Shown one piece after another: positions 386 to 62,929 of a stretch of DNA of 64,000 bases. The translations under genes and the position numbers were made by a program. The notes under the pieces were generated by a model, which saw nothing but the letters and a program-made list of their open reading frames with translations, did not search any database and was not told the DNA's origin. The DNA lies in IMG/VR virus record IMGVR_UViG_3300032236_001850, positions 248,001-312,000 of that record, one strand, 5' to 3'. Position 1 is the stretch's first letter, and the number at the start of each line of letters is the position of its first letter.

Positions 386-1882
386 ATGAAAAGAGTATTA
401 GATTTTAGTGGATATAGCAAAATATTCGAAGCAGATACACCACCTGCACCTGCACCAGCGGGAGGAGCAACACCAGCTCCAACAACAGGAACAACACCTG
501 CACCAGCGGGAGGAGCAACACAAGCTCCAGCAACGGGAACAACACCTGCACCAGCGGGAGGAGCAACACCTGCACCAGCAGGCGATAAAAAAGAAGCTGC
601 TCCTGATAAAAAAGATGCCACTCCAGATAAAGCAAAATCATCCAATGCGCCAACAGCTGCCACATCAGTTGGGGATCAGCTATATAATGCTTTTATTGAC
701 ATATATTTCATATTAGTTTCAGGTATAGATGGGGGATATCCAGACGTGGTTGCTGATCTTCAAAGTGTTTCACAACAAACAGATGCAACTAAAAAAGGTG
801 ATGCAATGGCAGATGCTCTTAATAAGGTTTCGCAAAAATTAAATGCTGATTATAAATCACAAATAGGTGGAGATGTTAAAGGATTTAGCGACGATCTTAA
901 AAAAGCATACACTACACTTGTTACTTCTGACGAGGGTAAAAAATCATTGGATGGTATTAACAAGAGAATAGACGATTCGATTAATAAATATGTAACTGAA
1001 CTTGCTGCTGAGCTTAAAAAAGCAAAAGCACCTATTAAGGAATCATTCCAAGCTTGGAGAGAATCTGAACAATTAAACGAGGGATTATTTGATAAAAATC
1101 TATTTCCAGAAAGAAGACAAGAATTACTTAGCACCATAATAACTCCTAAAATGTCGCAATTTAAAACGATTGCTGACACCACGATGGATAGCGCTTACAA
1201 GCAAGCTGCTCAAACAGCATATGATGCAATGAGTAAGTTATCTGATGAATTATCCAAGGATGACACTTGGGACAAAATGAAGAGAAGAGAAAGAAAGGAT
1301 AGATTAGAAGCTATTCCTGGTGATGTTGATAAGATACAATCTGCAATGAATGATGCTACAACTAAATTTACTGCTCAACTTAAGATAGACAAGGATGTGA
1401 CTGATAGTCTTAAATCAGTTGATGATAAAGCTAAAGACATCAAATCAAAAGCAACGGAACTTGTTAATAAACAAGCTGCTGCTGAAGCTAAGAAAAAAGA
1501 AGAGGAAGAAAAGAAAAAAGGTGGTGATAAAAAAGAGGAAGATAAAAACGCTCCTAAAGAAATAAAATCGGGTAATATAGATAAAGATAATCTTAAGAAA
1601 ACTGGATCTAATTATCAAGCAATTAAAGACTTCCAAGGAAAACTTAATACAATTCTACCAGATAATCAGCAGATAAAAGCTGACGGTGGTTACGGTAAAA
1701 ATACAGAAGAAGCAATTAGAAGGGTTGCTAGACTTATAGGCGGTTCAACTGGTGAAGATCTAGTTAAGAGCACGGACGATGGTAAAAAACTAACACCAGA
1801 ATTCCAAACAATGGTTGCTAATTGGATAGATCCAAAGGTGCAGGCAAAAATGAAAGATCTAGTAAGCGGAAAGACATCATAA
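386..1882 (+). CDS. Putative internal virion protein with capsid-targeting-like N-terminus, Pro/Ala/Thr/Gly repeats, helical core and C-terminal peptidoglycan-binding-like domain
   Basis: N-terminus MKRVLDFSGYSKIFE|AD; C-terminal LKKTGSNYQAIKDFQGKLN...IKADGGYGKNTEEAIRR resembles PG_binding_1 (L..G......V..lQ..L.......DG.fG..T..A). Confidence 0.55.
   Translation: MKRVLDFSGYSKIFEADTPPAPAPAGGATPAPTTGTTPAPAGGATQAPATGTTPAPAGGATPAPAGDKKEAAPDKKDATPDKAKSSNAPTAATSVGDQLYNAFIDIYFILVSGIDGGYPDVVADLQSVSQQTDATKKGDAMADALNKVSQKLNADYKSQIGGDVKGFSDDLKKAYTTLVTSDEGKKSLDGINKRIDDSINKYVTELAAELKKAKAPIKESFQAWRESEQLNEGLFDKNLFPERRQELLSTIITPKMSQFKTIADTTMDSAYKQAAQTAYDAMSKLSDELSKDDTWDKMKRRERKDRLEAIPGDVDKIQSAMNDATTKFTAQLKIDKDVTDSLKSVDDKAKDIKSKATELVNKQAAAEAKKKEEEEKKKGGDKKEEDKNAPKEIKSGNIDKDNLKKTGSNYQAIKDFQGKLNTILPDNQQIKADGGYGKNTEEAIRRVARLIGGSTGEDLVKSTDDGKKLTPEFQTMVANWIDPKVQAKMKDLVSGKTS
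449..585 (+). repeat. Coding tandem repeat, about 48-bp period (PAPAGGATPAPTTGTT / PAPAGGATQAPATGTT / PAPAGGAT / PAPAG)
   Basis: cctgcaccagcgggaggagcaacac occurs three times. Confidence 0.9.
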
Positions 1883-2616
1883 TGGAAATTAAAAAATTCA
1901 GTGAATTTTCTGTTCTTCAAAGGGTATACGAAAAAAACGGAGACCCGGTTGAGCAGAACACACCAACAAAGACTGGCATAAAATATAGGGATAATATAAA
2001 TCTCCCAACCGAAGATACCGGAGACGACTCAGCGGGGCTATATACTATATTTCTAACACAAGCTTCATCTGTTATCAGTAGCATGTCAGATAATGTTGCA
2101 CCCATCAATCCAGATAAAGGGACTAAAGCAAGTAAAGACATAGCTGAATTAATAAAAAATCTGAAACCAACATATGAATCTCACAAGAATTTATGGAGTG
2201 AAATAGAAAAAATAAGTGACTATGTTGGCGGTGATTGGCAAAATATAAGCAAGGGGGAATTATCATCATTACATGCCTTTGATCCACAAGGAAATGTTTT
2301 GGGTACCTTTAAGCAGAATATGAAGAATCTTGATACTAGACTTAAATCAAAGGATATTACAGATTCACAATATGCAGACGAAGCTAAAAATCTTAGGATT
2401 GAAGCGAATAATAACCTGGATAGCTCAAGATCATTATACTATATGAAAATAGGTGAGGCTCTAGATTATTATATGCAGGCAACCAAGGTTTTTAAACAAG
2501 GAGCACTTTTATGCTTACAAAATATGGAATCTGAAGCAAAAGAAAATCCATCATCAGGAAAAAATTATCTGAATATTATAACGGAAAGTGCAAAAAACAT
2601 ACTAGGTCATAATTAA
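1882..2616 (+). CDS. Hypothetical protein, capsid-targeting-like N-terminus (start probably 1882, not 1822)
   Basis: TAATG stop-start overlap with upstream gene; MEIKKFSEFSVLQRVYE|KN. Confidence 0.65.
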   Translation: MEIKKFSEFSVLQRVYEKNGDPVEQNTPTKTGIKYRDNINLPTEDTGDDSAGLYTIFLTQASSVISSMSDNVAPINPDKGTKASKDIAELIKNLKPTYESHKNLWSEIEKISDYVGGDWQNISKGELSSLHAFDPQGNVLGTFKQNMKNLDTRLKSKDITDSQYADEAKNLRIEANNNLDSSRSLYYMKIGEALDYYMQATKVFKQGALLCLQNMESEAKENPSSGKNYLNIITESAKNILGHN

Positions 2617-3645
2617 ATGTCAAACATATCAAATAAAATAGTAAATGAAAGCTTTGGTTCTTGGCTTAATCAGGCAAGACAATGGGCAAGTGGTGTTGGT
2701 CAGGGTGCATTGAGTGGAACTGTATTTGACAAGGGAGACAAACAGGACTATAATGCACGAGTTCAGGATCAATTACAAAGAGCTGAAATATTACAAAGCG
2801 CAATTTTTGATGCAGGAAACACTATAGATAGTGTTCTTAATAGTCTAGAAGGCACAGATCTACAGAAAAAAGCAAAAAATGCTGCTTCTGATATGATATC
2901 ATTTCTACAGCAATCAATAAAAACTGTACAATCCATAATAAGCGAGGGAGGTCAGGGTGATATGACCAATAAATCTAGCTATGCAAATAATGGAGGATTG
3001 GATCCGGGTAGAAAAAAACAACTCGATGACGTTGCTGCAGGACTGGATAGAATCACTCAAAGAAGTGGGAGCAGCAAAGGCTATGAGAATAGTCCACTGG
3101 ATACATGGTGTAGAGAATTCTTAGGTAAACATAACGAGAACTTTGAATCCAACGAATATCTTTCAACGGGAAATTCACTTGTTGCTAAAGCACAATCCAT
3201 TATCAACGAAATAAGAAATGCAGCAGAGGTAGATAGAAAAATAGCAGAAAAAGACGTTGATAAGGTTATATCCAAAGGATTAAAACAGCTACAAAGATTT
3301 ATAGGTGGTAAAAGTGATACACAAGCAATATTAGTACCTAAACCAGGAAGTCAATTAGAGGAATTAATTAATAGGAATTCAAATAAGCCACAATCAGCAG
3401 CGGTACAGAAATTCAGAGAAGACCTAAGAAAACTCAACATTCAAACTTCAACCGAAGATGTTTGGTCAGAGAAGGACGATCCTTGTGCAGAAGAAGCTGC
3501 AACAGTCGTTAGTGCTATAACTAAGAAAAAATATGAACCTAAAGAAAAGGAGGGATTTAAAGAGTTACAGAGAGACGTTAAAACACTTGTGAAAAATCAA
3601 CCAAAGATAAAGGAGATATTAACACAAAAACCACCGAAAATTTAG
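2617..3645 (+). CDS. Hypothetical helical protein, possible internal virion protein
   Basis: Abuts previous stop; MSNISNKIVNE|SF resembles a prohead-protease site. Confidence 0.6.
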   Translation: MSNISNKIVNESFGSWLNQARQWASGVGQGALSGTVFDKGDKQDYNARVQDQLQRAEILQSAIFDAGNTIDSVLNSLEGTDLQKKAKNAASDMISFLQQSIKTVQSIISEGGQGDMTNKSSYANNGGLDPGRKKQLDDVAAGLDRITQRSGSSKGYENSPLDTWCREFLGKHNENFESNEYLSTGNSLVAKAQSIINEIRNAAEVDRKIAEKDVDKVISKGLKQLQRFIGGKSDTQAILVPKPGSQLEELINRNSNKPQSAAVQKFREDLRKLNIQTSTEDVWSEKDDPCAEEAATVVSAITKKKYEPKEKEGFKELQRDVKTLVKNQPKIKEILTQKPPKI

Positions 3646-3703
3646 GGTCCGTTAAAGTTTCGTTAAATAGTTAAAAAACCGAAACCAAAACGAAAAAACA
3701 CTG

Positions 3704-3850
3704 TAAGATAATTATCTTAATTTTCCCCCTGGTGAAGAATCTATTACTTATCTAATACATCTTAGAGCCCAAACTTTATTTTAAATAGATAAACATACCC
3801 CAATCTTAGACCCAGATTTTTAAATATAATAAAGATCCCCTAATCTTAAT
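3704..3850. repeat. 16-bp palindrome plus imperfect 40-44 bp tandem repeats in a non-coding gap
   Basis: TAAGATAATTATCTTA at 3704-3719; ATCTTA(G/A) units starting 3759, 3803 and 3843. Confidence 0.6.
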
Positions 3851-3918
3851 AATTCATTTAAAAAAGAAACAAAACACAAGATTTTCCATATTATAATAGA
3901 TAAAAATATTAATGTAAT

Positions 3919-5100
3919 ATGGCTAAAACAAACACAACAAAATCTTCATCCGGTTTTTCCTTTCTCAGCATGGACAAGGAGCTATCAAAAATATCCGGAT
4001 TTGAAACTGGATCAATCCTAGCAACAAATACTTTTAGTGAGGTTGACGAATGGATTCCAACAGGAAACTACCTATTAAATGCACAAATTTCTGGATCCCT
4101 ATTCGGCGGTGTACCAAACACTAGATCTTTTGGTGTTATGGGAGATCCTGGTACTGGTAAATCTTTCTTCTGTTTAAATGTGGTTAGGGAAGCACAAAAA
4201 ATTGGCTATGATGTTATCTATTGTGATACTGAAGGAGCCATTGATAAATCAGGAGCTGTTAAATTTGGTATAGATGTAAATAAGATTAGATACCAACCTA
4301 TACAAACTGTATCACAATTCCAGACTTTCGTTGCTAATGTTCTTGACATTGTCAAGAAAGCAAAAGCAAATGGTGATAATCCAAAAATCCTTATAGTTCT
4401 TGACTCCCTTGGTATGTTAAGTACTGATAAAGAATTGGCTGATGCAATGAAAGGTCATAACGCAGCAGATATGGGTGCTAAGGCTAAGGAACTTAGAAAG
4501 TTATTCAGAGTAATCACATTGGATCTTACTGCTGCTAAAATTCCGTTGATCTGTACCAATCACGTTTATGCTGGCGGTGGATATGTACCAACAAAAGAAA
4601 GCTCAGGTGGTGATGGACCTATCTTCGCTATGTCTGTTGTTGCTTTTCTTTCTAAAGCTCAATTGAAAGATGGATCTGGTACCAAAACTGGTATCGTTTG
4701 TACCTCGACATTAAAGAAAAGCAGATTCACTATACCTGAACAGATTAAATTCCATATATCATTCTCCCATGGTATGAATCCATATGTTGGGTTACAGGAT
4801 TATGTTACTTGGGAAGCATGCGGAATAGAAAGAGGTAAATTCGAGGAAGTTAAAAATGCTGATGGAAAGAAGGAATTGGTATTTAAACCAAGCGCATCTT
4901 CGACAAGATGGGGTGTTAGACATCTTGGTAAAACTGTTGCTTCCACTGAATTGTTTACTGATAAGGTTTTCACTATGGAAGTTCTTCAGCAACTTGATGT
5001 TAATGTAATAAAAGATAAGTTTAAATTTCCGGATCTTGCAGATCATTCAGAATTGCTTGACTCTATAGAGGATGAGGATTTAGAAGATGGAGAAGAATAA
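3919..5100 (+). CDS. uvsX: UvsX/RecA-like recombinase
   Basis: IPTGNYLLNAQISGSLFGG, Walker A GDPGTGKS, YCDTEGAID, IVLDSLGML, NHVY, SGGDG. Confidence 0.93.
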   Translation: MAKTNTTKSSSGFSFLSMDKELSKISGFETGSILATNTFSEVDEWIPTGNYLLNAQISGSLFGGVPNTRSFGVMGDPGTGKSFFCLNVVREAQKIGYDVIYCDTEGAIDKSGAVKFGIDVNKIRYQPIQTVSQFQTFVANVLDIVKKAKANGDNPKILIVLDSLGMLSTDKELADAMKGHNAADMGAKAKELRKLFRVITLDLTAAKIPLICTNHVYAGGGYVPTKESSGGDGPIFAMSVVAFLSKAQLKDGSGTKTGIVCTSTLKKSRFTIPEQIKFHISFSHGMNPYVGLQDYVTWEACGIERGKFEEVKNADGKKELVFKPSASSTRWGVRHLGKTVASTELFTDKVFTMEVLQQLDVNVIKDKFKFPDLADHSELLDSIEDEDLEDGEE

Positions 5101-5386
5101 AATAAAATTCAAATATATCATGGGTCTTTGGAAAACTCTTCCAAATTACCCAACAAAAGAGGATATAGTCTATGAGATTAGTCTATATCTTCTTAAGGAT
5201 AAAAGACCCAATGGTGAATTTTCTCCACAAACTTTTAATTCGATATTTGGTTCTAAATGGGAAAGTGGATCTCATGGGCTTGTAATCAAAAAAATGATTG
5301 AAGATGGTGATTTTATAGAAACAAAAAAAAGCACCGCAAGTAAGATATGGTATAAGATAAACAATAACCCTTATTATAAAAATTAA
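5087..5386 (+). CDS. Hypothetical protein
   Basis: 99-aa ORF overlapping uvsX stop, in operon with helicase. Confidence 0.65.
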   Translation: MEKNKIKFKYIMGLWKTLPNYPTKEDIVYEISLYLLKDKRPNGEFSPQTFNSIFGSKWESGSHGLVIKKMIEDGDFIETKKSTASKIWYKINNNPYYKN

Positions 5387-5388
5387 AA

Positions 5389-6687
5389 ATGGATTTAACA
5401 AACTCGGAAAATGTAATACTTAGGTATATTCTTCAAAATTCACCTTATCTCGACACGTGTAAACCCGACTTCTTCAAGAATGAATCTCTTGGTGTCATTT
5501 TTACCGGGGTCAAGGAGTTTTGGGACAGATACCATGAGATGCCCTCCGCTGAGCAGATGATAGAATCTTTTAAGATGAAAGGTGGGAATCTTGTGGATGC
5601 TTCCGAGATCAGATCAATCTATGCTATAGATCTTGCTAAGTACGAGGATGCTTGGTTAAAGGAAACAACCGAATTTTTTGTTGAGTATAAAAATCTAACA
5701 AAATCTGCTGTTGATGGATTAAAATATATTCAATCAACACCTGTTTCTTCTGAGAATATAAAAACTGTTATAGATACTTTCAAAAATATCATTGTTGAAA
5801 GAAACAGCATAAATTTTAGTTTTGATGAGGGACTAGATTTCTTCAATCCTGAAAACCATAAGCAGCTGACCCAAAATACCTTCTCTAGTGGATTTCCATT
5901 TATAGATACAGTTCTTGGTGGTGGATTTTCCGCTAAAGCTCTTTACGTTTTTATGGGTATGCCTAAGGTTGGAAAATCATTATGGCTGGGTAATATAGCA
6001 GCACAAGCGGTTAAGACTGGGCATAATGTTGCTGTTTTATCTTTAGAGATGAGTGATCGTAAATATGTTAAGAGAATGGGAGCTAATATACTTGGTGTTC
6101 CTGTATCTGAATATAATAAAATTGCTGACGATGAACAAGCAATGAAGAAAAAATTGGGATCGATGATGTATGACAATCTGAAGGTTCCTGGTCATTTAAC
6201 AATTAAGGAGTTTCCTACTTCACAAGCATCCGTTAATGACATTGAGAGATATTTGAAAAAAATGGAGGAAATTAAGGGTATCAAATTTAAGGTGATTGTG
6301 GTGGATTATATTAATATTATGAAGAACTGGAGGAATGCAAACTCCGAGAATACTTATATGAAGATCAAGCAAATTGCTGAGGATTTAAGAGGTATGGCCA
6401 TGCAAAACAATTGGTCAATCATTACCGCTACCCAAACTAAACAGGGTGATTTCGATGCTTCCGATTTAAGTATAAACTCGGCAGCTGAATCATCAGGTCT
6501 TGTTGCTACCGTTGACGGAATGTTCGGTATCATACAAGATCCAATTATGTATGCTAATAAGGAATATAAATTAAAAATTCTGGCAAACAGAGATGATGGC
6601 TATAAAAACGCCTACAAGGTATTTAGCGTTGATTACAGGTATATGAGAATTACCGAAGACGTGAATGTACCTATGCACGTAGAGTAA
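5389..6687 (+). CDS. gp41: Replicative DnaB-like helicase (T4 gp41-like)
   Basis: Walker A GMPKVGKS, SLEMS, IVVDYINIM, ITATQT, AESSGL..TVD. Confidence 0.92.
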   Translation: MDLTNSENVILRYILQNSPYLDTCKPDFFKNESLGVIFTGVKEFWDRYHEMPSAEQMIESFKMKGGNLVDASEIRSIYAIDLAKYEDAWLKETTEFFVEYKNLTKSAVDGLKYIQSTPVSSENIKTVIDTFKNIIVERNSINFSFDEGLDFFNPENHKQLTQNTFSSGFPFIDTVLGGGFSAKALYVFMGMPKVGKSLWLGNIAAQAVKTGHNVAVLSLEMSDRKYVKRMGANILGVPVSEYNKIADDEQAMKKKLGSMMYDNLKVPGHLTIKEFPTSQASVNDIERYLKKMEEIKGIKFKVIVVDYINIMKNWRNANSENTYMKIKQIAEDLRGMAMQNNWSIITATQTKQGDFDASDLSINSAAESSGLVATVDGMFGIIQDPIMYANKEYKLKILANRDDGYKNAYKVFSVDYRYMRITEDVNVPMHVE

Positions 6688-6703
6688 AAATAACCATTAA
6701 AAA

Positions 6704-7192
6704 ATGGAAGAAATCCAAGAAACCCCCGAGAATGAAAATGTAAATCCGGAGGTTGCAAAAAAACAGCTTGGTGATAAGATATTTGGAGCTCATAACAATC
6801 CAACAAAGGACAACGATTATAATGACAGTTTTGATATAGATCAGAGTCATAATATATTAAGCGAGTCCTATGATGAAGAGGAATATCTACATAGAAAAAA
6901 ATTAGAGGAATTGGTTTATGAAGCATTTCAAACTTCCAGATGGTTTCCTTTAAGTTACAAGAAGAAGATACCTAAGGATTTGGTACCTCATTTATTTCAA
7001 GAGATACTTGAAAAATTGGAGGATACTGAATTTTCATTTTCTGAAAAATTTGTTTCTATATGTGATTATGTTCAAATACCATACGCTAAAGCTTATGAAA
7101 TAACTCCTATCAAATATAAGGAGATTATTATAAACGAGCTGGAAGCAAAATACAGCATTTTAACAAAAAGAAAAATTAGAAAATTGTTTTAA
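6704..7192 (+). CDS. Hypothetical protein
   Basis: 162-aa ORF between helicase and gp47. Confidence 0.7.
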   Translation: MEEIQETPENENVNPEVAKKQLGDKIFGAHNNPTKDNDYNDSFDIDQSHNILSESYDEEEYLHRKKLEELVYEAFQTSRWFPLSYKKKIPKDLVPHLFQEILEKLEDTEFSFSEKFVSICDYVQIPYAKAYEITPIKYKEIIINELEAKYSILTKRKIRKLF

Positions 7193-7193
7193 T

Positions 7194-9976: not shown

Positions 9977-9991
9977 TAGGTTGATCTTTCG

Positions 9992-9999
9992 AATATATA
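9992..9999 (+). promoter_or_regulatory. Putative late promoter (AATATATA variant)
   Basis: Motif upstream of TTG 10015. Confidence 0.5.
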
Positions 10000-10014
10000 G
10001 AATAAAAAACTAAA

Positions 10015-11244: not shown

Positions 11245-11245
11245 T

Positions 11246-11992: not shown

Positions 11993-12005
11993 AAAAATTA
12001 AAAAC

Positions 12006-12296: not shown

Positions 12297-12340
12297 TTGA
12301 AACAATAACAGCTAATATTAGTATAAATTAAAAAATAAAA

Positions 12341-12613: not shown

Positions 12614-12631
12614 TTCTCACAAAACAGGTTT

Positions 12632-12662: not shown

Positions 12663-12682
12663 TTTATAGTCTAACATTTTTT

Positions 12683-50763: not shown

Positions 50764-50780
50764 AAAAAAGTAAATAAATC

Positions 50781-52505: not shown

Positions 52506-52527
52506 TCTTAGGATTAACAAATATATC

Positions 52528-52557
52528 AAAAGTCCCGGATATACCGGGACTTTTTTT
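52528..52557 (+). terminator. Intrinsic terminator
   Basis: AAAAGTCCCGG-atata-CCGGGACTTTT plus T-run. Confidence 0.85.
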
Positions 52558-52590
52558 ATGACCTGAACTTAAATAAAAAATCTCTGTTGG

Positions 52591-52598
52591 GATATATA
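52591..52598 (+). promoter_or_regulatory. Putative late promoter GATATATA
   Basis: About 22 nt upstream of ATG 52621. Confidence 0.6.
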
Positions 52599-52620
52599 GA
52601 TGATAAAAATAAATCAATTT

Positions 52621-53775: not shown

Positions 53776-53777
53776 TC

Positions 53778-54680: not shown

Positions 54681-54937
54681 TAACATTTAATACTTTCAGA
54701 TTATTGGAGGATGATTCCGAAGCAACAAAGGTTCAGGAACTCAGATTACAATTATCACAAAATTTTGATGAACTAACAGATGCTAAAGCTCTTAAGAAGG
54801 AAGGTGATCCTGCTTCGGAATCTGCAAGTTTAGATAAGCAATCTGCTATTTATGTACAGATATCAAACACAATGAAGGCTCTTTCTGCCGAAATCAAAAA
54901 ACAACAAACAACAGTAGCAACGCCTACTACAACATAA
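54677..54937 (+). CDS. Small putative internal head protein
   Basis: MITFNTFRLLE|DD. Confidence 0.55.
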   Translation: MITFNTFRLLEDDSEATKVQELRLQLSQNFDELTDAKALKKEGDPASESASLDKQSAIYVQISNTMKALSAEIKKQQTTVATPTTT

Positions 54938-54949
54938 AAAGATAAAGAG

Positions 54950-57526: not shown

Positions 57527-57548
57527 TAATTTTTTTTAAAATAAAGCA

Positions 57549-57577
57549 AGGAGGATCTTAAAAATCCTCCTTTTTTT
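57549..57577 (+). terminator. Intrinsic terminator
   Basis: AAGGAGGAT-cttaaaa-ATCCTCCTT plus T-run. Confidence 0.8.
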
Positions 57578-57595
57578 GTGTAATTTTATAGGGTC

Positions 57596-57623
57596 GAAAT
57601 CAAATTAATTTTTGCATCTATAA
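57596..57623 (+). promoter_or_regulatory. Putative middle promoter GAAAT...ATCTATAA
   Basis: Shared motif class upstream of kinase 57629. Confidence 0.45.
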
Positions 57624-57628
57624 TATTT

Positions 57629-58183
57629 ATGATATACGTATTTGAAGGACCTAGAAATTCTGGCAAGAGCTATCTTTCCAAAGCTATAGAAAAAAGCTTG
57701 ATTATACCAAGATTCCAATTTGACTTTGGAAGTTATTTTAATATGCTTGAACTAAAAAGCAAAGATAACAGGGAGGCTCATTCTTTCTCTATGGGTAAGG
57801 AACTTATGATAATGCAAATAGCTAAAGATCTTAAAAGATCCCTTCCTGATTACATACATGATAGAGGTATATTAACTGTACTGGCTTGGGGTTTATCCGA
57901 GAATAGAATAACTGAGGATGATGTTATAAAACAGATAGAATTTATAAAGGAACATGATCTCATGTCAGAAATTACAGTTATCTATGTCAATGGTGACAAT
58001 CCTGATAAATCCAACAGAAATAAAGATCAGTGGGATTATGCAGAACTTGATGATAAGGAAAGATCAGCTTTTAAATTTGTTATCTTTAAATTTATGGAAC
58101 TCGGATTCCAAAATATAAAGATTTTTGAAAATAAGTTTGATGACGAAAGTGTTGAGAGATTAAAGAATTATATAAACGATTAA
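57629..58183 (+). CDS. P-loop (d)NMP kinase, thymidylate-kinase-like
   Basis: FEGPRNSGKS and HDRG (DR motif). Confidence 0.7.
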   Translation: MIYVFEGPRNSGKSYLSKAIEKSLIIPRFQFDFGSYFNMLELKSKDNREAHSFSMGKELMIMQIAKDLKRSLPDYIHDRGILTVLAWGLSENRITEDDVIKQIEFIKEHDLMSEITVIYVNGDNPDKSNRNKDQWDYAELDDKERSAFKFVIFKFMELGFQNIKIFENKFDDESVERLKNYIND

Positions 58184-58193
58184 ATAGAAATAT

Positions 58194-59600
58194 ATGTGTG
58201 GTATCATATTAACTACCGGAGCTAAGACAAATCCTGAAATATTAGATTCCATAAAACATAGAGGTATAGAGAGTCATAGTGAGTCTTTTGGAAATGTAAC
58301 TTTATGTCACCATAGGCTTCCAATTCAAACCTTGGATGGTGATGATTGGGGTCAACCGATTAATGTCTCTAAAGACATCTATATGATGTTTAACGGTGAG
58401 ATATTCAATTACGATCAAAAACAATTCTCCTCAGATACCGAATATCTTTGTAATTTGTTTTCCAAACTTGATGGTACCAATCTTGAATTTTTTGCTGCGA
58501 TGTATATTCCACATATTTGTACATGGGATGGTTTCTGGTCGATAGTTCTATATAGTACTGTAACTGGTCAAGTGATAGCATTTACAGATCCACTTGGAAA
58601 GAAATGTCTTTATAAGAATGAGCTTGGTGAAGTTTGCTCGGAGATAAAAGGTTTATACACTAGCAATTCTAAAATGGATGAGAAATTCATAAGCACTGTC
58701 AGAAAGTTTGGTTATAATACAGATAATAGAACTGCTTACACCAACATAAAAAGATTGCTACCAAACACGATATATTCATGGAATATGGGATCTCCGATGT
58801 TCGAACAAACCTATAACGAGTATTATAGAATATGGGATACACCAATACCTGAACTGGTTGGGGAGGATTATGAAACACATAAGGATTGGCTATGGGATAG
58901 GATGTTTGAGAGCGTTAACAATAGATTGGTATCCAGAAACTATCCTATATCAATATTGGTTTCTGGTGGACTGGATTCTGCTATAATCGCAGCAATTCTA
59001 AAGGAATTAAATGCTGATGTTAAATGGTTCAGCATAGAGAATGGAGAAACCCCCTTTGTTAATGATTTAGAAGCTCATTTAGGCACTTCTACAAATTTTC
59101 TAGGATATGATATGGATCCGGAAAAAAATGCTCTTATATACGCCCAATGGAATGAATCTCCAATAGATCTAGGATCCGTGATTCCACAATTCCATCTCTT
59201 TGAAACTATCAGAAAAAATACCGACTATAGAATAGTTTTAAGCGGTGATGGTTCTGATGAGTTATTCGGCGGGTACTCACGCATACACGAGTACGACTCT
59301 CAGAAATCTGACATCTTTCAAGAATTAAGTTTTTATCATTTACCTAGACTTGATAAAATGTCCATGGCCCACACCCTTGAATTGAGATCACCATTCCTAA
59401 ATAATGATATAGTGAGATTTGCGATGCATCTTCCACTGGAATGGAGAACTGATAAAAAAATACTTAAGGACACCTTTGGTCCTATGCTTCCCGATTCCGT
59501 TGTCAATAGAAAAAAAGAAGCTCTAAAAAATCCTGAAATAAAGGAGGATAAATTAGCCTACAGACAGAAGGCCGTTGATCTTTTTCTTTCTAAAGCATAG
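58194..59600 (+). CDS. asnB: Asparagine synthetase B-like glutamine amidotransferase
   Basis: N-terminal MCGI, HRL.I, NGEIFN, SDTE, SGGLDS, SGDGSDELFGGY, RSPFL. Confidence 0.88.
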   Translation: MCGIILTTGAKTNPEILDSIKHRGIESHSESFGNVTLCHHRLPIQTLDGDDWGQPINVSKDIYMMFNGEIFNYDQKQFSSDTEYLCNLFSKLDGTNLEFFAAMYIPHICTWDGFWSIVLYSTVTGQVIAFTDPLGKKCLYKNELGEVCSEIKGLYTSNSKMDEKFISTVRKFGYNTDNRTAYTNIKRLLPNTIYSWNMGSPMFEQTYNEYYRIWDTPIPELVGEDYETHKDWLWDRMFESVNNRLVSRNYPISILVSGGLDSAIIAAILKELNADVKWFSIENGETPFVNDLEAHLGTSTNFLGYDMDPEKNALIYAQWNESPIDLGSVIPQFHLFETIRKNTDYRIVLSGDGSDELFGGYSRIHEYDSQKSDIFQELSFYHLPRLDKMSMAHTLELRSPFLNNDIVRFAMHLPLEWRTDKKILKDTFGPMLPDSVVNRKKEALKNPEIKEDKLAYRQKAVDLFLSKA

Positions 59601-59624
59601 TCTTTATTAATCTGAATCTTCTTG

Positions 59625-59632
59625 GATATATA
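59625..59632 (+). promoter_or_regulatory. Putative late promoter GATATATA
   Basis: About 20 nt upstream of ATG 59652. Confidence 0.6.
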
Positions 59633-59651
59633 CATAAATAAAAATCTAAGA

Positions 59652-60302
59652 ATGACAAGAATAGTTAAGGATTTTGATTCTTTCTACAATGAAGAACCAA
59701 TTCATGAAGACTTTGATATAATGGGATTACTTGGTAAAACCATTGGATATTTAGGTGATGGTTTTATTGACACAATAAAGCAGAAATTTGCAGCTATGTT
59801 GATGGAAAAACTTGGAATAAGAGAAAAATCCATAGCTTCTGAGTTTGTGCAACAGGTTGTTTCGAGTATAGACATGAAAGAATGGCCAGGTATACTTAGT
59901 GGAGAAAACGACAATAAGAAATTCTTTATACCTAAAATTGCAGAAGCGATACAATACACATTAGAAAGAAAGGGATTTGAAGGGATTGCAAATTCTATTG
60001 GTCTTGAATCCGAGGGATTGATAATGAGAACTTTAATAAATACGATACAGAATAAAGCAACAGGTAAAGCTAAAATAGAAAAATTTCTTTTTGATCTTTT
60101 TGGTGACGAGAATGTTGGTGGAAATATCATATCCTCTCTAGATAGCAAAGATAAACAACAATTTAGTGATGCTCTTTCTAAAGCAGCAAGTAAAAAAGTA
60201 AATTACAAACCAGGATCTTCTAATTCTGATGGTGGTGAATCGTTTATTGGTAATATAATGGGAGGTTTACTAGGCGGTAGCAAAGGAATAGCAACAGCAT
60301 AA
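59652..60302 (+). CDS. Putative internal head protein (start 59652 preferred)
   Basis: MTRIVKDFDSFYNE|EPIHE. Confidence 0.6.
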   Translation: MTRIVKDFDSFYNEEPIHEDFDIMGLLGKTIGYLGDGFIDTIKQKFAAMLMEKLGIREKSIASEFVQQVVSSIDMKEWPGILSGENDNKKFFIPKIAEAIQYTLERKGFEGIANSIGLESEGLIMRTLINTIQNKATGKAKIEKFLFDLFGDENVGGNIISSLDSKDKQQFSDALSKAASKKVNYKPGSSNSDGGESFIGNIMGGLLGGSKGIATA

Positions 60303-60317
60303 AATAAAAGATAAGCA

Positions 60318-60653
60318 ATGAATCAAAAAGATGTAAGCAAAAGAGATATATTGGACTTTGAAAAGTTTTTGACAAAGGTTCATGATGACAAATATAAACC
60401 ATTTGCTCCTGTAAATCAAGAAGATAGGGAGGATGCTAATGGTTTATCCAAAATAAAAAGAGAGGCAAGATACGATTTTGTTGGCTATGCTGATGCAGTA
60501 TTTGGACATAATTCAAAAATAAATGTACCTGGATATAGAGTTGATGTCGGAGGTAAACCTGGTATGGCAGATGCTGGTGCATTTGGTACTGCTTTCAATA
60601 CAAGTGAATCTGAAAACAATGATAGCTTTATTAAGAAACTATCGGATTTCTAA
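60318..60653 (+). CDS. Hypothetical protein
   Basis: 111-aa ORF; contains ILDFEKF near N-terminus. Confidence 0.6.
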   Translation: MNQKDVSKRDILDFEKFLTKVHDDKYKPFAPVNQEDREDANGLSKIKREARYDFVGYADAVFGHNSKINVPGYRVDVGGKPGMADAGAFGTAFNTSESENNDSFIKKLSDF

Positions 60654-60667
60654 TCGAATGCAATTAT

Positions 60668-60699
60668 AAAAAAAAGAGAGCATCTGCTCTCTTTTTTTA
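60668..60699. terminator. Bidirectional terminator between convergent genes
   Basis: A-run GAGAGCA-tc-TGCTCTC T-run. Confidence 0.8.
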
Positions 60700-61422
60700 T
60701 GTGATTGTTTCTATAAATTTTTCTTTTGCTAGTTTGTAGATATCAGAATCTTCATCGAAATCCTCATATATTTCTATAACAAAAAGTTCAGGAGATACGT
60801 TTTTTTCTATTGAAAATTCTTCCAGAATCTCGTGGTATATGAATTCATAATTCATCGAGTATCTTGAATTTTTCAAATTTATCCTTTTTAGAACACATAT
60901 TTGTTTGTTACCGTGCTCAGTTTTCATTGTAACTGCACCTTGCCAGTAGTATGGTATGATTTTATCCGTTACCATGTTTCTTATGATGAGTATACCAGAA
61001 TTAGCTGGTTCCTTCTTCTCCGCATTGAATTTAGATTGAACCTTAAATATTTTGATCTTAGATTCCTCATCCTTTAGCATATCCAAAAATATTTCTGAAT
61101 ATTCATAGAGTGTTTCTAGGGATGATTCTATAATTGATTCGATGGTATCCCTTTTTTCTTTGCTTAGCTTTTTGAAATCGAAATTATTTATGTACTCTCT
61201 TTCCTCTTCGGTTAGCTGGGAAATTATAGTTTTTCCTATAGTGTTGTTTTTCTTAAATTCGTTAAGAGATTTAACTATCTTGGAAACAGCCCGTAATATT
61301 GGATAACAGTTTTTTGAATTTATATTTTTGCTTATAGATTTTAGGTAATCTAAAAGAACATATTCTTTATGTTCTGTGTCTATTGGTTCCTTAATAAACC
61401 AAATTGTGCTTAAATTTTTCAT
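60697..61422 (-). CDS. Hypothetical protein, the only credible minus-strand gene
   Basis: 241-aa ORF filling a gap with no + strand ORF; bidirectional terminator at its 3' end. Confidence 0.75.
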   Translation of the reverse strand: MKNLSTIWFIKEPIDTEHKEYVLLDYLKSISKNINSKNCYPILRAVSKIVKSLNEFKKNNTIGKTIISQLTEEEREYINNFDFKKLSKEKRDTIESIIESSLETLYEYSEIFLDMLKDEESKIKIFKVQSKFNAEKKEPANSGILIIRNMVTDKIIPYYWQGAVTMKTEHGNKQICVLKRINLKNSRYSMNYEFIYHEILEEFSIEKNVSPELFVIEIYEDFDEDSDIYKLAKEKFIETIT

Positions 61423-61449
61423 CTTTAACTTTTAAAAGTTGGATCCTAT

Positions 61450-61488
61450 TATATATTTACATTCTAATTTTTTCAAAATGGATATATA
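61450..61488. promoter_or_regulatory. Divergent late promoters
   Basis: AATATATA on the - strand (61450-61457) and GATATATA on the + strand (61481-61488). Confidence 0.5.
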
Positions 61489-61508: not shown

Positions 61509-61955
61509 ATGAAAAGAATCAACGAGGGAAGAATTTATGATTATTCTGCTTTTACCGATAGTAAAAAACCAACTAATAGCAATGATTATACATTTGGTAT
61601 AGAATTGGGATATACTGATATAGACATAACCAATAGGCCTGACGAATACGAGGACATATCCGATGCTAAGATATTTATAGATTACTCAGTAAATTTGATC
61701 ATTAAGAAAAGTGGAATAGATGCTATTGATATGGTTGTGAACTCAATGGAACTTGATTTTGAAGTTGATGATTATCCTAATGAAACTAAGGAATTTGATA
61801 TAGATCTAATACCTGGTAGAACTGTAGATTATAATCAGATAGAGATTGATAAGAACGATATACTTATACCAACCTATCCAAAATCTGTTCAAATTGATAT
61901 GAATAAATCAACGGAAGCTAAAAATTTTAAAATAAACGTGGTTTTTGGATCATAA
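61509..61955 (+). CDS. Hypothetical acidic protein (start 61509 preferred)
   Basis: MKRINE|GRIYDYSAF. Confidence 0.6.
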   Translation: MKRINEGRIYDYSAFTDSKKPTNSNDYTFGIELGYTDIDITNRPDEYEDISDAKIFIDYSVNLIIKKSGIDAIDMVVNSMELDFEVDDYPNETKEFDIDLIPGRTVDYNQIEIDKNDILIPTYPKSVQIDMNKSTEAKNFKINVVFGS

Positions 61956-61966
61956 TAAATAAAAAC

Positions 61967-62929
61967 ATGAGAATTTTAGACTTTAGAAATTTTATATTAA
62001 ACGAGGAGGCTTCTCCCATGTATGACGAGATACCAGAAGTAAAATCAATATCTGATGATGGATATGAGATAGAGGCAGAAAGATTTGATGATGAAAATCA
62101 GGATCCACCATTTGGTAAGGTGTTACTAACAAAGGATTCTCCTAAAAATGTTAGACTTTCCTTTCATAACTATAAAGGTAAAAAAATTAAGGATTTGTGG
62201 ATACCTAAGGATCATTGCCAGATTAAGGACGGTAAGGATGATTCGTGTTTGGTGACAATACCTGGTGATAGCAATTGGTTAAATTCTGATGAGAATAGAA
62301 ATAAACTTGAGGATTTTATAGAGGGATTATATAATAGTAAGATGAGGGATAAGCTTTATTCCGATGATATAATTGAAACCATAAAAAATGACGTGTATCA
62401 TATAATGGATATGATCGGTATACCTTGTGAGGTTGTAAGTGTTAATAAACTTGATGGTGATAACGAATATGAGGTTGTGTTGGATAATGATATTTCAATA
62501 GACGTTAATAAAAAATCAGCAAAAGAGCTTCTTGGAAATTTTAAGATGTACAAGAACAATAGAGAAACATCTCCTTCGGTTGAGATAAAAAGCAAGGGTG
62601 GAAAGCATAATTTTTATTTCTATAACGAAGATTTGCCAAATTTAGAGGATGAATCAGATTTAATAGACGTTAAGAAGAATCATAGATTATATTACTTGCT
62701 TAAAAAATCATTAGGTGTTGATAATAATGAGGATAGAGAAATTTTTTACAATCATTTTGAGGCGAAATCTAAAAATTTTAACAATGAGAATGGCGAAAAA
62801 CTAAATCCTGAAATGAAAAGAATGAGAATTGAGGACGGTAAAAAGTTAAAAGATCTTAAGAATATTGCAAGTACTTTTAAACCAGAGAATGAAATAATAA
62901 AAATATTTCCAAAAAACTTAGTAAATTAG
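61967..62929 (+). CDS. Hypothetical protein, capsid-targeting-like N-terminus
   Basis: MRILDFRNFILNE|EA. Confidence 0.65.
   Translation: MRILDFRNFILNEEASPMYDEIPEVKSISDDGYEIEAERFDDENQDPPFGKVLLTKDSPKNVRLSFHNYKGKKIKDLWIPKDHCQIKDGKDDSCLVTIPGDSNWLNSDENRNKLEDFIEGLYNSKMRDKLYSDDIIETIKNDVYHIMDMIGIPCEVVSVNKLDGDNEYEVVLDNDISIDVNKKSAKELLGNFKMYKNNRETSPSVEIKSKGGKHNFYFYNEDLPNLEDESDLIDVKKNHRLYYLLKKSLGVDNNEDREIFYNHFEAKSKNFNNENGEKLNPEMKRMRIEDGKKLKDLKNIASTFKPENEIIKIFPKNLVN

What the first reader, a model, noticed from the sequence alone, without database searches (positions are those of the whole stretch)
386..62929. About 14 unrelated ORFs share a T4 capsid-targeting-like N-terminus, implying a large packaged protein cargo
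Seen: MKRVLDFSGYSKIFE (386), MEIKKFSEFSVLQRVYE (1882), MSNISNKIVNE (2617), MKHIKSIYE (42902), MDKIFNFNLFIE (45133), MKCIPSFEDFEEYEGLIE (52621), MTLKFKEWDQLNE (53778), MITFNTFRLLE (54677), ..RAIFE..RLFE (54950), MTRIVKDFDSFYNE (59652), ILDFEKF (60318), MKRINE (61509), MRILDFRNFILNE (61967). None of the replication enzymes has it, and most of these genes or their operons follow the GATATATA motif. Known: T4 internal proteins use a 10-aa capsid-targeting sequence (MKTYQEFIAE) removed by gp21 after (L/I)xE. Inference: this phage loads many proteins into the head with one zip-code and ejects them into the host.
Basis: partly seen in the sequence, partly recalled or inferred. Interest (0 to 1): 0.8.

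Follow-up and report, generated by a model that had tools for sequence, protein, structure and literature searches.

The report
T4-style capsid zip-code in a huge phage
A 434-kb uncultivated phage puts the same short N-terminal tag that phage T4 uses to load proteins into its head on at least eight mostly unrelated late proteins, so the packaged protein cargo of such huge phages can probably be read from sequence; packaging itself is not yet shown.

Summary
The real signal has two parts: an aromatic-x-x-aromatic box at about residues 4-10, then hydrophobic-x-E (often hydrophobic-N-E) 0-9 residues later. These are the positions shown experimentally to drive targeting (Y4, F7) and processing (I8, E10) in the T4 IPIII capsid-targeting sequence.

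Eight families carry it (386, 1882, 45133, 52621, 53778, 54677, 59652, 61967). It is kept in orthologues from up to 80 related contigs even where body identity falls to about 25%. Three ORFs (2617, 42902, 54950) have only a conserved short cleavage-like N-terminus. Two (60318, 61509) have only the box.

The window encodes a gp21-type protease, a gp23-type capsid protein and a gp55-like late sigma. GATATATA sits 14-30 nt upstream of these operons and of structural genes.

An independent 462-kb relative (LR756500) carries about 30 near-identical leaders. Lak-A1 shows none.

The protease carries 13 in-phase 14-residue repeats whose core resembles the T4 tag.

Packaging, cleavage and ejection remain inferred. 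This is a new member of a known kind.

The parts
386..1882 (+). Leader protein, 498 aa. Leader is aa 1-15 (nt 386-430), with box F7..Y10 and cleavage-like IFE|A. It is followed by a P/A/T/G-rich linker (aa 16-86), a helical bundle and a C-terminal PG_binding_1-like module.
   Evidence: Leader in 11/11 distinct orthologue N-termini with body identity down to 28%. AlphaFold model pLDDT 69, aa 1-86 disordered. PF01471 hit in 3/13 members. GATATATA at 354-361.
1882..2616 (+). Leader protein, 244 aa. Leader is aa 1-17, with box F6..F9 and VYE|K. Its start overlaps the stop of the upstream gene by one base.
   Evidence: 6/6 orthologue N-termini keep the box and hydrophobic-x-E, with spacer length varying by 1-5 residues.
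2617..3645 (+). 342-aa protein with a short cleavage-like N-terminus (IVNE|SFGSW) and no aromatic box.
   Evidence: (I/V)-I/V-N-E|SFGSW is kept in close relatives. In L091 and L092 the homologue is the C-terminal part of 674-aa and 567-aa ORFs; the 674-aa one begins with a box plus LLE.
33665..34024 (+). gp55-like late sigma factor (region 2 only). Candidate reader of the GATATATA late-promoter-like element.
   Evidence: phrog_234 'late sigma transcription factor', E 2e-15. Sigma70_r2 E 5.9e-5, 23.2 bits, just under Pfam's 24-bit cut-off.
42902..43381 (+). 159-aa protein with a short conserved N-terminus M-K-[HY]-I-K-x-[IL]-[NY]-E and no box. It resembles the T4 gp24 N-terminus (MAKINE).
   Evidence: Conserved in most of about 25 distinct orthologue N-termini. 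T4 gp24 N-terminus read from NC_000866.
45133..45948 (+). Leader protein, 271 aa, GTG start. Leader is aa 1-12, with box F7..F10 and FIE|N. The body belongs to phrog_36119, and one cyanophage homologue is annotated as a nucleotidyltransferase.
   Evidence: 48 distinct orthologue N-termini were read off at the start that follows a GATATATA-type motif by 15-22 nt (45 GTG, 2 TTG, 1 ATG). By inspection nearly all carry box + 0-9 residues + hydrophobic-x-E. Homologues in Maribacter phage and cyanophage lack the leader.
48799..50763 (+). gp21-type (S77) prohead protease fused to a long acidic C-terminal extension. The true start is probably the second ATG at 48808. It has the highest density of hydrophobic-x-E sites among the window's long proteins (5.7 per 100 aa).
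   Evidence: phrog_207 E 1e-39; PF03420 E 1.8e-8. Site density and pI 4.7. Weak similarity of the extension to T4 gp22, E 0.001.
49690..50235 (+). 13 in-phase 14-residue repeats, Y-[ST]-[EK]-Y-L-A-E-N-[LV]-[DN]-K-x-I-x (protease aa 298-479). Each holds the compact form of the tag (aromatic-x-x-aromatic-hydrophobic-A-E), like the T4 core Y-Q-E-F-I-A-E.
   Evidence: Exact 14-residue phase, 13 copies. 10-14 copies (mostly 13) in about 60 orthologues. The 7-mer pattern occurs 13 times here against 4 times in all other window proteins. Tandem repeats at DNA level.
50781..52505 (+). gp23-type major capsid protein with a T4-like N-terminal delta region and three conserved cleavage-like sites (LINE-6, LIE-18, SLNE-44).
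   Evidence: PF07068 E 7e-42. Alignment to T4 gp23. Sites conserved in all orthologues.
52621..53775 (+). Leader protein, 384 aa. Box F7..F10, then LIE|N at aa 18. 20% D+E and 20% K+R. Likely a prohead core or scaffold-like protein.
   Evidence: 30/42 orthologue N-termini match. Orthologues start at this ATG, and GATATATA ends 23 nt upstream. Composition.
53778..54680 (+). Leader protein, 300 aa. Box F5..W8 and LNE|A at aa 13. Highly charged.
   Evidence: 48/50 orthologue N-termini. Indels of 2-6 residues between box and LNE, with both elements retained.
54677..54937 (+). Leader protein, 86 aa. Box F4..F7 and LLE|D at aa 11. Its orthologues are the closest look-alikes of the T4 IPII/III leader.
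   Evidence: 24/24 orthologue N-termini.
54950..57526 (+). 858-aa protein with conserved N-P-V-A-[RK]-x-hydrophobic-F-E, then hydrophobic-F-E|N-E at aa 25, and no box. The N-terminal half is a remote paralogue of 386 and includes a PG_binding_1-like module. The C-terminal alpha/beta domain has unknown function.
   Evidence: hhalign against the 386 family: probability 95.6%, E 1e-8, cleavage sites aligned. PF01471 in 5/27 members. Three homologues named by JGI as peptidoglycan-binding/hydrolase-like. Model pLDDT 76.6.
59652..60302 (+). Leader protein, 216 aa. Box F8..F11, then YNE at aa 14 and IHE|D at aa 19.
   Evidence: 25/39 orthologue N-termini match. The spacer varies by 3-12 residues, with box and [IV]-[NQH]-E kept. 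GATATATA ends 20 nt upstream.
60318..60653 (+). 111-aa protein with a conserved [IV]-L-D-F-x-x-F box at aa 11-17 but no following hydrophobic-x-E. Status ambiguous.
   Evidence: Box conserved in nearly all of the 27 distinct orthologue N-termini scored; none matches the full pattern.
61509..61955 (+). 148-aa protein. The conserved element is the box R-I-Y-D-Y-x-A-F. The 'MKRINE' prefix exists only in the window's clade and resembles the capsid protein's own N-terminus.
   Evidence: Orthologues begin M-x-R-I-Y-D-Y. N-terminal similarity to the capsid protein. GATATATA ends 21 nt upstream.
61967..62929 (+). Leader protein, 320 aa. Box F6..F9 and LNE|E at aa 13.
   Evidence: 5/5 orthologues.
354..61488 (+). 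GATATATA late-promoter-like elements at 354, 12683, 17858, 28635, 30799, 34524, 42338, 45109, 48778, 52591, 59625 and 61481. Most are 14-30 nt upstream of a start codon.
   Evidence: 15 copies, all on the + strand, against 6.2+-2.6 expected. They precede the neck, sheath, portal and protease genes and the leader-gene operons.

Best explanation
The window is positions 248001-312000 of a 434.5-kb uncultivated, distantly T4-like myophage. The absence of Shine-Dalgarno sequences and the nature of its relatives suggest a Bacteroidota host.

At least eight late-expressed protein families, mostly unrelated to one another, begin with a portable 9-26-residue leader of the T4 capsid-targeting-sequence type.
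- The first part is M-x-[KR]-[IV]-L-x-F-x-[DE]-[FWY]. Its aromatic pair at i and i+3 would dock the protein onto the prohead core.
- The second part, 0-9 residues later, is [LIV]-[N/x]-E. The gp21-type protease would cut there once the shell has closed.

The likely docking partner is the protease's own C-terminal scaffold-like extension. It contains 13 in-phase 14-residue repeats, each a compact copy of the same box-plus-cleavage unit. After maturation it would be chopped into 14-mers.

Mature cargo would stay in the head with the DNA. The cargo includes two paralogous proteins with peptidoglycan-binding-like modules and a nucleotidyltransferase-like protein. The charged helical proteins encoded next to the capsid gene may instead be core parts that are degraded.

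Shown here: the motif, its conservation, its portability, its match to the T4 determinants, and the presence of the protease, capsid protein, late sigma factor and promoter-like element.

Inferred: docking, cleavage, retention in the virion and ejection.
For: 1. Match to T4.
- T4 IPII and IPIII begin M-K-T-Y-Q-E-F-I-A-E|A. IPI has F-K-E-F, a 9-residue spacer, then I-T-E|A.
- Mutagenesis places targeting at residues 4 and 7 and processing at residues 8 and 10 (PMC9026906).
- The same two-part pattern finds all three T4 IPs.

2. Enrichment in the window.
- 9/61 N-termini match, against 4.0% of internal positions (p=7e-4).
- Composition-preserving shuffles give 2-3 matches.

3. Distribution across orthologue families is bimodal.
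- 64-100% of orthologue N-termini match in 7 leader families, against <=12% in 26 other families.
- An eighth family, 45133, has 48 distinct orthologue N-termini read off at the start that follows a GATATATA-type motif (47 GTG/TTG, one ATG). By inspection nearly all carry the leader.
- Spacer indels leave the box and the cleavage motif intact.

4. Features the pattern did not impose are also conserved.
- Positions -3 and -2 are I/V then L, and position +2 is D/E.
- P2 is Asn in 44% of leaders. The capsid protein (LINE, SLNE) and the protease (LNE) have the same P2.

5. Portability.
- 46/293 ORFs in related loci that have no homologue in the window also match the pattern; many of these are textbook leaders.
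- In the independent 462-kb genome LR756500, 56/625 N-termini match against 3.95% internal (p=2e-8) and 28-30 in shuffles.
- 27-31 of those LR756500 ORFs carry near-identical M-K-Y-I-x-x-Y-x-x-F-hydrophobic-x-E leaders, spread over 19 BLAST clusters.
- 32% of identical residues in those leaders use different codons, so selection acts on the peptide.

6. Specificity control. Lak-A1 (295 kb scanned) shows no enrichment: 14/266 against 9.4+-2.6 in shuffles.

7. Machinery.
- S77 gp21-type protease, gp23-type capsid protein and gp20-type portals.
- gp55-like late sigma factor.
- GATATATA upstream of structural genes and leader operons.

8. Scaffold repeats. 13 copies in the window and 10-14 in about 60 orthologues.
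Against: - There is no proteomic or experimental evidence that any of these proteins is in a virion or is cleaved.
- Within the window alone the similarity among leaders is weak by general scoring. The pattern was designed after looking at the window.
- Averaged over all positions, leaders are not clearly better conserved than protein bodies.
- A strict position matrix built from the protease repeats does not rank the leaders. The repeats use Y where the leaders use F, and the spacing is fixed, so the link between repeats and leaders is at pattern level only.
- The repeats in LR756500 are degenerate and do not obviously co-vary with that genome's leaders.
- PTm1 (25 kb around its capsid gene) and Lak-A1 lack such leaders, so the tag is not universal in the wider group.
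- The pattern gives false positives, for example Rad50-like 8312 and about 4% of random positions.
Confidence: 0.75

Rival explanations
1. The targeting and cleavage mechanism is the same, but the fate differs. Most tagged proteins are prohead core or scaffold components, analogous to T4 gp22, gp67 and gp68. They would be degraded and expelled at maturation, so the delivered cargo would be small or absent.
For: - 52621, 53778 and 54677 lie directly after the capsid gene. 52621 and 53778 are about 20% acidic plus 20% basic with coiled-coil-type weak hits, and 54677 is small like T4 gp67.
- In T4 every core protein, not only the internal proteins, starts with a short hydrophobic-x-E N-terminus.
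- The protease extension looks like a scaffold made to be chopped up.
Against: - 386, 54950, 45133 and 61967 have few internal hydrophobic-x-E sites (0.8-1.1 per 100 aa, against 5.7 in the protease). AlphaFold models of 386 and 54950 show folded helical and alpha/beta regions, and members of both families carry PG-binding-like modules; 45133 has a nucleotidyltransferase-like body.
- LR756500 tags about 30 proteins in 19 families scattered through the genome, far more than a core needs.
Confidence: 0.15
2. The resemblance is a by-product of composition. In an AT-rich genome without Shine-Dalgarno sequences, 5' coding regions are rich in K, I, N, F, Y and E codons, so 'MK.I..F..F..E' arises by chance or by selection on the mRNA rather than on the peptide.
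For: - Bare hydrophobic-x-E is common everywhere: 51% of N-termini against 37% of internal 20-mers.
- Pairwise similarity of leaders within the window is only modestly above that of internal segments.
Against: - Shuffles that keep N-terminal composition, and column permutations, give 2-3 hits against 9 observed in the window. In LR756500 they give 28-30 against 56.
- Lak-A1 is even more AT-rich and shows no enrichment.
- Family-level presence or absence is bimodal.
- Synonymous codons differ at 32% of identical residues among the LR756500 leaders.
- Spacer indels preserve both elements.
Confidence: 0.04
3. The leader is a real shared signal but for another destination or purpose. It could direct assembly into the tail or baseplate, or association with a membrane or replication compartment. 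It could also mark a recombination cassette boundary that moves genes behind late promoters.
For: - The promoter-plus-leader unit recurs in front of unrelated bodies. This is also what cassette exchange at the T-even internal-protein locus would produce (from general knowledge of that locus, not tested here).
- PG-binding-like modules would also suit envelope-associated proteins.
Against: - The signal combines the T4 targeting residues with a gp21-type cleavage motif. The capsid protein and the protease share the same P3, P2 and P1 preferences.
- The leaders are not hydrophobic enough for secretion or membrane insertion.
- Peptide-level selection argues against a purely DNA-level role.
Confidence: 0.06

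Closest known systems
T4 capsid-targeting sequence (CTS) of internal proteins IPI, IPII, IPIII and Alt, removed by the gp21 protease
   Same: - N-terminal propeptide of 10-19 residues.
- Aromatic pair at i and i+3, followed by hydrophobic-x-E|small or charged residue.
- IPI shows the same variable spacer.
- The tag sits on otherwise unrelated proteins.
- An S77 protease and a gp23-type capsid are encoded.
- Late, gp55-type transcription.
   Different: - The host lineage is different and very distant: capsid protein identity to T4 is detectable only at E 1e-8.
- The box starts at residues 4-9 rather than exactly 4.
- P2 is mostly Asn rather than Ala.
- More tagged families: 8 in 64 kb, and about 30 proteins in the relative LR756500.
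- Several cargo proteins are large (up to 858 aa).
- Nothing has been shown experimentally.
T4 prohead core proteins gp22, gp67, gp68 and the vertex protein gp24
   Same: - Short M-x-x-hydrophobic-x-E N-termini. T4 gp24 MAKINE compares with the window capsid protein MKLINE, and with M-K-[HY]-I-K-x-I-N-E in orthologues of 42902.
- Multi-site cleavage of an acidic helical scaffold.
- The genes are clustered with the protease and capsid genes.
   Different: - Here the scaffold-like segment is fused to the protease and is built from 13 exact 14-residue repeats.
- Similarity to gp22 is weak (E 0.001).
Propeptides of head and ejection proteins in phiKZ-like giant phages (phiKZ, 201phi2-1, SPN3US)
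   Same: - A giant phage packages many proteins.
- A gp21-related protease cuts after Glu.
- The propeptides are thought to target proteins into the prohead (PMC5694885).
   Different: - Those propeptides are mostly longer than 100 residues, with a small P3 residue (S/A/G-x-E).
- Here the leaders are 9-26 residues, P3 is L/I/V in 91%, and there is a defined aromatic box.
Tenacibaculum phage PTm1 'prohead core scaffolding protein and protease' (BBI90692)
   Same: Protease-scaffold fusion with aromatic-containing repeats in the C-terminal part. Jumbo myophage of a Bacteroidota host. Capsid protein 38% identical.
   Different: The repeat unit is different (W-I-containing units of about 16-17 residues). 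No box-type leaders were seen in the 25 kb around its capsid gene.
Encapsulin cargo-loading peptides
   Same: A short portable peptide directs unrelated proteins into an HK97-fold shell.
   Different: The encapsulin peptide is typically at the cargo's C-terminus, binds the shell protein itself and is not removed. There is no protease or scaffold.

Membership tests
T4-type capsid-targeting sequence (CTS) | Located at the extreme N-terminus, about 10-20 residues long | tested here: met
   Leader length (position of the Glu) is 9-26 residues, with modes at 11-19, across 7 families and 147 distinct leaders.
T4-type capsid-targeting sequence (CTS) | Targeting determinants are two aromatic residues at i and i+3 (T4 IPIII Y4 and F7) | tested here: met
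   An F/Y-x-x-F/W/Y box is conserved in 8 families. Not met in 2617, 42902 and 54950.
T4-type capsid-targeting sequence (CTS) | Processing determinants are hydrophobic P3 and Glu P1 (T4 I8 and E10) | tested here: met
   P3 is L/I/V in 91% of leaders, and P1' is A/K/E/S. P1 Glu and a hydrophobic P3 were required by the pattern itself. Not met in 60318.
T4-type capsid-targeting sequence (CTS) | The genome encodes a gp21-type (S77) prohead protease and a gp23-type capsid protein with its own cleaved N-terminal region | tested here: met
   phrog_207 E 1e-39 and PF03420. PF07068 E 7e-42. Conserved LINE, LIE and SLNE sites in the capsid protein N-terminus.
T4-type capsid-targeting sequence (CTS) | The same tag is carried by proteins that are otherwise unrelated | tested here: met
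   Mature parts show no BLAST similarity except 52621/53778 (E 5e-4). 386 and 54950 are remote paralogues by hhalign only. LR756500: 27 tagged proteins in 19 clusters.
T4-type capsid-targeting sequence (CTS) | The tag is sufficient for incorporation into proheads and is removed by the protease | not testable with these tools
   This needs virion proteomics or reporter fusions. No cultured member of this clade was found.
T4-type capsid-targeting sequence (CTS) | Mature proteins are ejected into the host with the DNA | not testable with these tools
   Inference from T4 only.
phiKZ-type head and ejection-protein propeptides | Long propeptides (usually more than 100 residues) cut at S/A/G-x-E | tested here: not met
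   Leaders are 9-26 residues with P3 L/I/V. The phiKZ and SPN3US features are taken from PMC5694885.
T4 gp22-type scaffold (tested for the protease C-terminal extension) | Acidic, helical, cut at many hydrophobic-x-E sites into small peptides, with sequence similarity to gp22 | tested here: inconclusive
   pI 4.7, and 5.7 sites per 100 aa with one Y-L-A-E|N every 14 residues. BLASTP to T4 gp22 gives only E 0.001, with biased composition.

The most novel reading that the evidence does not exclude
The zip-code is a single copy of the scaffold's own repeat. The protease-scaffold fusion carries 13 in-phase units of aromatic-x-x-aromatic-hydrophobic-A-E. Cargo proteins would carry one such unit and be recruited by co-assembling with this array. 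One protease specificity would then both release the cargo and dismantle the scaffold into 14-mers.

If so, the packaged proteome of uncultivated huge phages could be predicted from sequence alone. That proteome would amount to dozens of proteins per genome, including envelope-binding and enzyme-like proteins. The T4 CTS would be an ancient feature of the whole T4-like assembly line.
Probability: 0.25. Interest if true: 0.8.

Novelty: new member of a known kind. Interest (0 to 1): 0.62.

Why it matters
Huge phages (over 200 kb) are known almost only from metagenomes, and what their very large capsids carry besides DNA is unknown. A sequence-readable packaging tag would allow three things.

- It would let one list candidate virion-delivered proteins, such as first-strike effectors, envelope-penetration factors and anti-defence proteins, without cultivating the phage.
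- It shows that the residues mapped genetically in the T4 tag are conserved across a very large evolutionary distance. That gives a testable model for what the tag binds.
- It offers a natural set of portable tags for loading foreign proteins into large capsids.

The searchable literature links 'capsid targeting' to T4, P1 and phiKZ-like phages. None of the listed papers on huge phages or megaphages contained the term.

Tried and rejected
- A home-made ZOOPS expectation-maximisation motif search on the first 25 residues over-fitted a vague motif and was discarded.
- A strict position matrix built from the protease repeats did not rank the leaders, so I claim only pattern-level similarity.
- Regex-free pairwise BLOSUM scoring of N-termini inside the window had little power.
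- Mean conservation of the leader against the protein body showed no clear difference.
- Pfam and PHROGs gave no domain for any leader protein in the window itself.
- ESM Atlas searches of 54950 and 61967 scored below the noise level.
- A Foldseek search of the 386 model found only generic helical bundles.
- A profile search of the PDB with the 386 and 54950 families gave nothing convincing.
- Exact-peptide searching with 2617 found only the window's own contig.
- PTm1 (25 kb around its capsid gene) and Lak-A1 (295 kb) show no such leaders, so I do not claim the tag for all relatives.
- The rest of the window's own 434-kb contig could not be fetched, so its genome-wide count of tagged genes is unknown.

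Full report
**What the window is.** Nearly all genes are on the + strand, GC is about 33%, and start codons are preceded by A-rich sequence without a Shine-Dalgarno motif.

The window encodes a distant T4-like virion module:
- large terminase, 16006-17832
- tail sheath, 17895-21263
- two tail-tube paralogues
- two gp20-type portal paralogues, 34552-36186 and 36191-37843
- an S77 gp21-type prohead protease, 48799-50763
- a gp23-type major capsid protein, 50781-52505

It also encodes RecA/UvsX-like, DnaB-like, Mre11/Rad50-like, ligase, clamp-loader and exonuclease genes.

The window is positions 248001-312000 of IMG/VR contig IMGVR_UViG_3300032236_001850, which is 434,509 bp long. No GenBank phage is close at DNA level. 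The nearest capsid proteins in GenBank belong to the 462-kb metagenomic phage LR756500 (45% identity) and to the Lak megaphages (44%). Jumbo phages of Tenacibaculum and Flavobacterium are further off.

**Checking the observation.** It occurs in 31 of 61 N-termini against 37% of internal 20-residue windows, so on its own it proves nothing.

Reading the sequences side by side shows a more specific two-part signal. An aromatic-x-x-aromatic box starts at about residue 4-9, and hydrophobic-x-E follows a few residues later.
- Written as a pattern, it hits 9 of 61 N-termini against 4.0% of internal pseudo-N-termini (p=7e-4).
- Shuffles that keep each N-terminus' composition, or the position-specific composition of all N-termini, give 2-3 hits.
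- I designed the pattern after seeing the window, and a regex-free pairwise comparison inside the window is weak. The case therefore rests on independent sequences.

**Comparative evidence.** Capsid-anchored, RecA-anchored and 61967-anchored searches returned more than 100 related loci. Across orthologue families the pattern is essentially all or nothing. The fractions of distinct orthologue N-termini that carry it are:
- 386: 11/11
- 1882: 6/6
- 52621: 30/42
- 53778: 48/50
- 54677: 24/24
- 59652: 25/39
- 61967: 5/5
- 26 other families: at most 12%

Body identity in the positive families falls to 25-30%. Insertions and deletions change the spacer between the box and the Glu, yet both elements stay.

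The 45133 family had been hidden by its start codon. For 48 distinct orthologue N-termini I took the first start codon 10-40 nt after a GATATATA-type motif. It lay 15-22 nt downstream, was GTG or TTG in 47 of them (ATG in one), and by inspection nearly all of the encoded N-termini are canonical leaders.

Positions the pattern did not constrain are also conserved. These are I/V and L at -3 and -2, D/E at +2, and Asn at P2 in 44% of leaders. The capsid protein (LINE, SLNE) and the protease (LNE) show the same P2 preference.

The Rad50-like 8312 is a pattern false positive caused by its conserved ATPase N-terminal strand.

- Eight carry the full leader: 386, 1882, 45133, 52621, 53778, 54677, 59652 and 61967.
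- Three have only a conserved short cleavage-like N-terminus without a box: 2617, 42902 and 54950. In two relatives the 2617 homologue is the C-terminal part of a longer ORF, and one of these (674 aa) begins with a box plus LLE. The 54950 site aligns with the 386 cleavage site.
- Two have only the box: 60318 and 61509. The 'MKRINE' quoted for 61509 is not conserved. It does resemble the capsid protein's own N-terminus and T4 gp24's MAKINE.
- The mature parts are unrelated by BLAST. Profile comparison shows that 386 corresponds to the N-terminal half of 54950 (probability 95.6%, E 1e-8).

**Link to T4.** I read the T4 sequences from NC_000866.
- IPII and IPIII begin M-K-T-Y-Q-E-F-I-A-E|A. IPI has F-K-E-F, nine more residues, then I-T-E|A.
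- gp24, gp67, gp68, gp21, gp22 and Alt all begin with short hydrophobic-x-E N-termini.
- A review of the original mutagenesis states that targeting depends mainly on residues 4 and 7, and processing on residues 8 and 10, of the IPIII tag (PMC9026906). These are the aromatic pair and the hydrophobic-x-E.
- The pattern derived here recovers all three T4 internal proteins among 169 T4 ORFs scanned, with 12 hits in total.

By every feature that sequence can test, the leaders belong to the T4 capsid-targeting class. They do not fit the phiKZ/SPN3US class of long propeptides cut at S/A/G-x-E (PMC5694885).

**Portability and independent genomes.**
- In the related loci, 46 of 293 ORFs with no homologue in the window also match the pattern, and many of them are textbook leaders. 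Some come from a more distant 482-kb phage (L101).
- I scanned the whole of LR756500 in pieces as a genome that played no part in defining the pattern. There, 56 of 625 ORF N-termini match, against 3.95% of internal positions (p=2e-8) and 28-30 in shuffles.
- In LR756500, 27-31 ORFs begin with nearly the same 13 residues, M-K-Y-I-x-x-Y-x-x-F-hydrophobic-x-E. They lie in clusters across the genome and fall into 19 BLAST clusters.
- Among these leaders, 32% of identical residues use different synonymous codons, so the peptide rather than the DNA is conserved.
- Lak-A1 (295 kb, TAG read as X) shows no enrichment. This limits the claim and also shows that AT-rich composition does not create the signal.
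- PTm1 shows no leaders in the 25 kb around its capsid gene.

**Expression context.** GATATATA occurs 15 times, always on the + strand, against 6.2 expected. Twelve copies lie just upstream of start codons, most of them by 14-30 nt. These starts belong to the neck, sheath, portal and protease genes and to the operons beginning at 386, 42350, 45133, 52621, 59652 and 61509. A region-2-only sigma factor of the gp55 'late sigma' family is encoded at 33665-34024. The leader genes are therefore most likely transcribed together with the structural genes.

**The protease-scaffold repeats.** The protease has the usual N-terminal domain (aa 20-177) followed by a 470-residue acidic extension. It has the highest hydrophobic-x-E density among the window's long proteins. 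Residues 298-479 are 13 perfectly phased 14-residue repeats, Y-[ST]-[EK]-Y-L-A-E-N-[LV]-[DN]-K-x-I-x. About 60 orthologues have 10-14 copies. Each repeat contains aromatic-x-x-aromatic-hydrophobic-A-E, the compact form of the tag, very like the T4 core Y-Q-E-F-I-A-E.

My preferred reading is that this array is the gp22-equivalent scaffold. It would be cut every 14 residues at maturation, and single-copy leaders would dock on it. This is inference, and several results weaken it:
- A strict matrix built from the repeats does not rank the leaders.
- Similarity to T4 gp22 is weak (E 0.001).
- The LR756500 repeats are degenerate.

**What the cargo may be.**
- No leader protein in the window reaches a Pfam or PHROG function.
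- Some members of the 386 and 54950 families hit the peptidoglycan-binding domain PF01471 (3/13 and 5/27, best E 2e-4). JGI names three homologues accordingly.
- The models show a disordered linker after the 386 leader, helical bundles, and an uncharacterised alpha/beta C-terminal domain in 54950.
- The 45133 body has leaderless homologues in Maribacter phages and cyanophages, one of them annotated as a nucleotidyltransferase.
- 52621, 53778 and 54677 lie directly after the capsid gene. 52621 and 53778 are very highly charged (about 20% D+E and 20% K+R) and 54677 is small (86 aa), so they may be core components rather than delivered cargo.

**Conclusion.** This is a new member of the T4 capsid-targeting kind in a very distant huge-phage lineage, used on many more proteins. 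A previously undescribed repeat array in the protease-scaffold fusion suggests what the tag may bind.

Noticed in passing
window 34552-36186 and 36191-37843: Two tandem gp20-type portal paralogues, 49% identical over their full length. Both end in the same A/P/G-rich tail and ...PQVTL. LR756500 has a single portal at the corresponding place.
   Followed up: partly
window 49690-50235 (protease aa 298-479): 13 exact-phase 14-residue repeats Y-S-E-Y-L-A-E-N-L-D-K-x-I-x in the protease C-terminal extension. Copy number is 10-14 in about 60 orthologues. The LR756500 version is degenerate, and PTm1 has a different aromatic repeat.
   Followed up: yes
window 386-1882 and 54950-57526: The two proteins are remote paralogues (hhalign probability 95.6%). 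Both families contain a PG_binding_1-like module, which is unexpected for proteins predicted to sit inside the head.
   Followed up: partly
window 33665-34024 and 26045-26713: Two sigma-like genes. One is a region-2-only gp55-like late sigma factor, and the other is a 222-aa protein with regions 2 and 4. GATATATA looks like the matching late promoter.
   Followed up: partly
LR756500 (L118-L127), e.g. 12631-17016, 124308, 180972, 198758, 313382, 331856: Eleven proteins share a C-terminal motif ending N-A-D-D-F-G-F-F-D-N, right at the stop codon. All but one (411169-411819) begin with an M-K-[YF]-type leader. It may be a second signal or a family signature, and the window has nothing similar.
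   Followed up: no
T4 NC_000866: gene 61.1 (18966-19130) and 57B (73952-74410): Both begin with N-termini that fit the CTS pattern. gp61.1 starts M-K-T-F-K-E-F-I-K-E, almost the IPI/IPIII tag. I did not check whether this is already known.
   Followed up: no
window 21304-21858 and 21873-22448: Two adjacent tail-tube-like paralogues with nearly identical N-termini.
   Followed up: no
window 60654-61480: This is the largest stretch without a + strand gene. It holds a 241-aa minus-strand ORF (60697-61422) with no Pfam hit, and its + frames are hydrophobic junk ORFs.
   Followed up: partly
window 34028-34513, 43427-44332, 58194-59600, 6-293: Accessory genes lie among the virion genes: a TnsA-like endonuclease between the late sigma factor and the portal, a UvdE-type UV endonuclease, an asparagine synthase-like protein, and the 3' end of an ORF whose N-terminus looks like an NAD-dependent sugar dehydratase (by eye, not searched).
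   Followed up: no
window 52600-52620: The upstream ATG at 52600 begins one base after the GATATATA element ends and is absent from most orthologues. The real start is 52621. The protease likewise probably starts at 48808 rather than 48799.
   Followed up: yes
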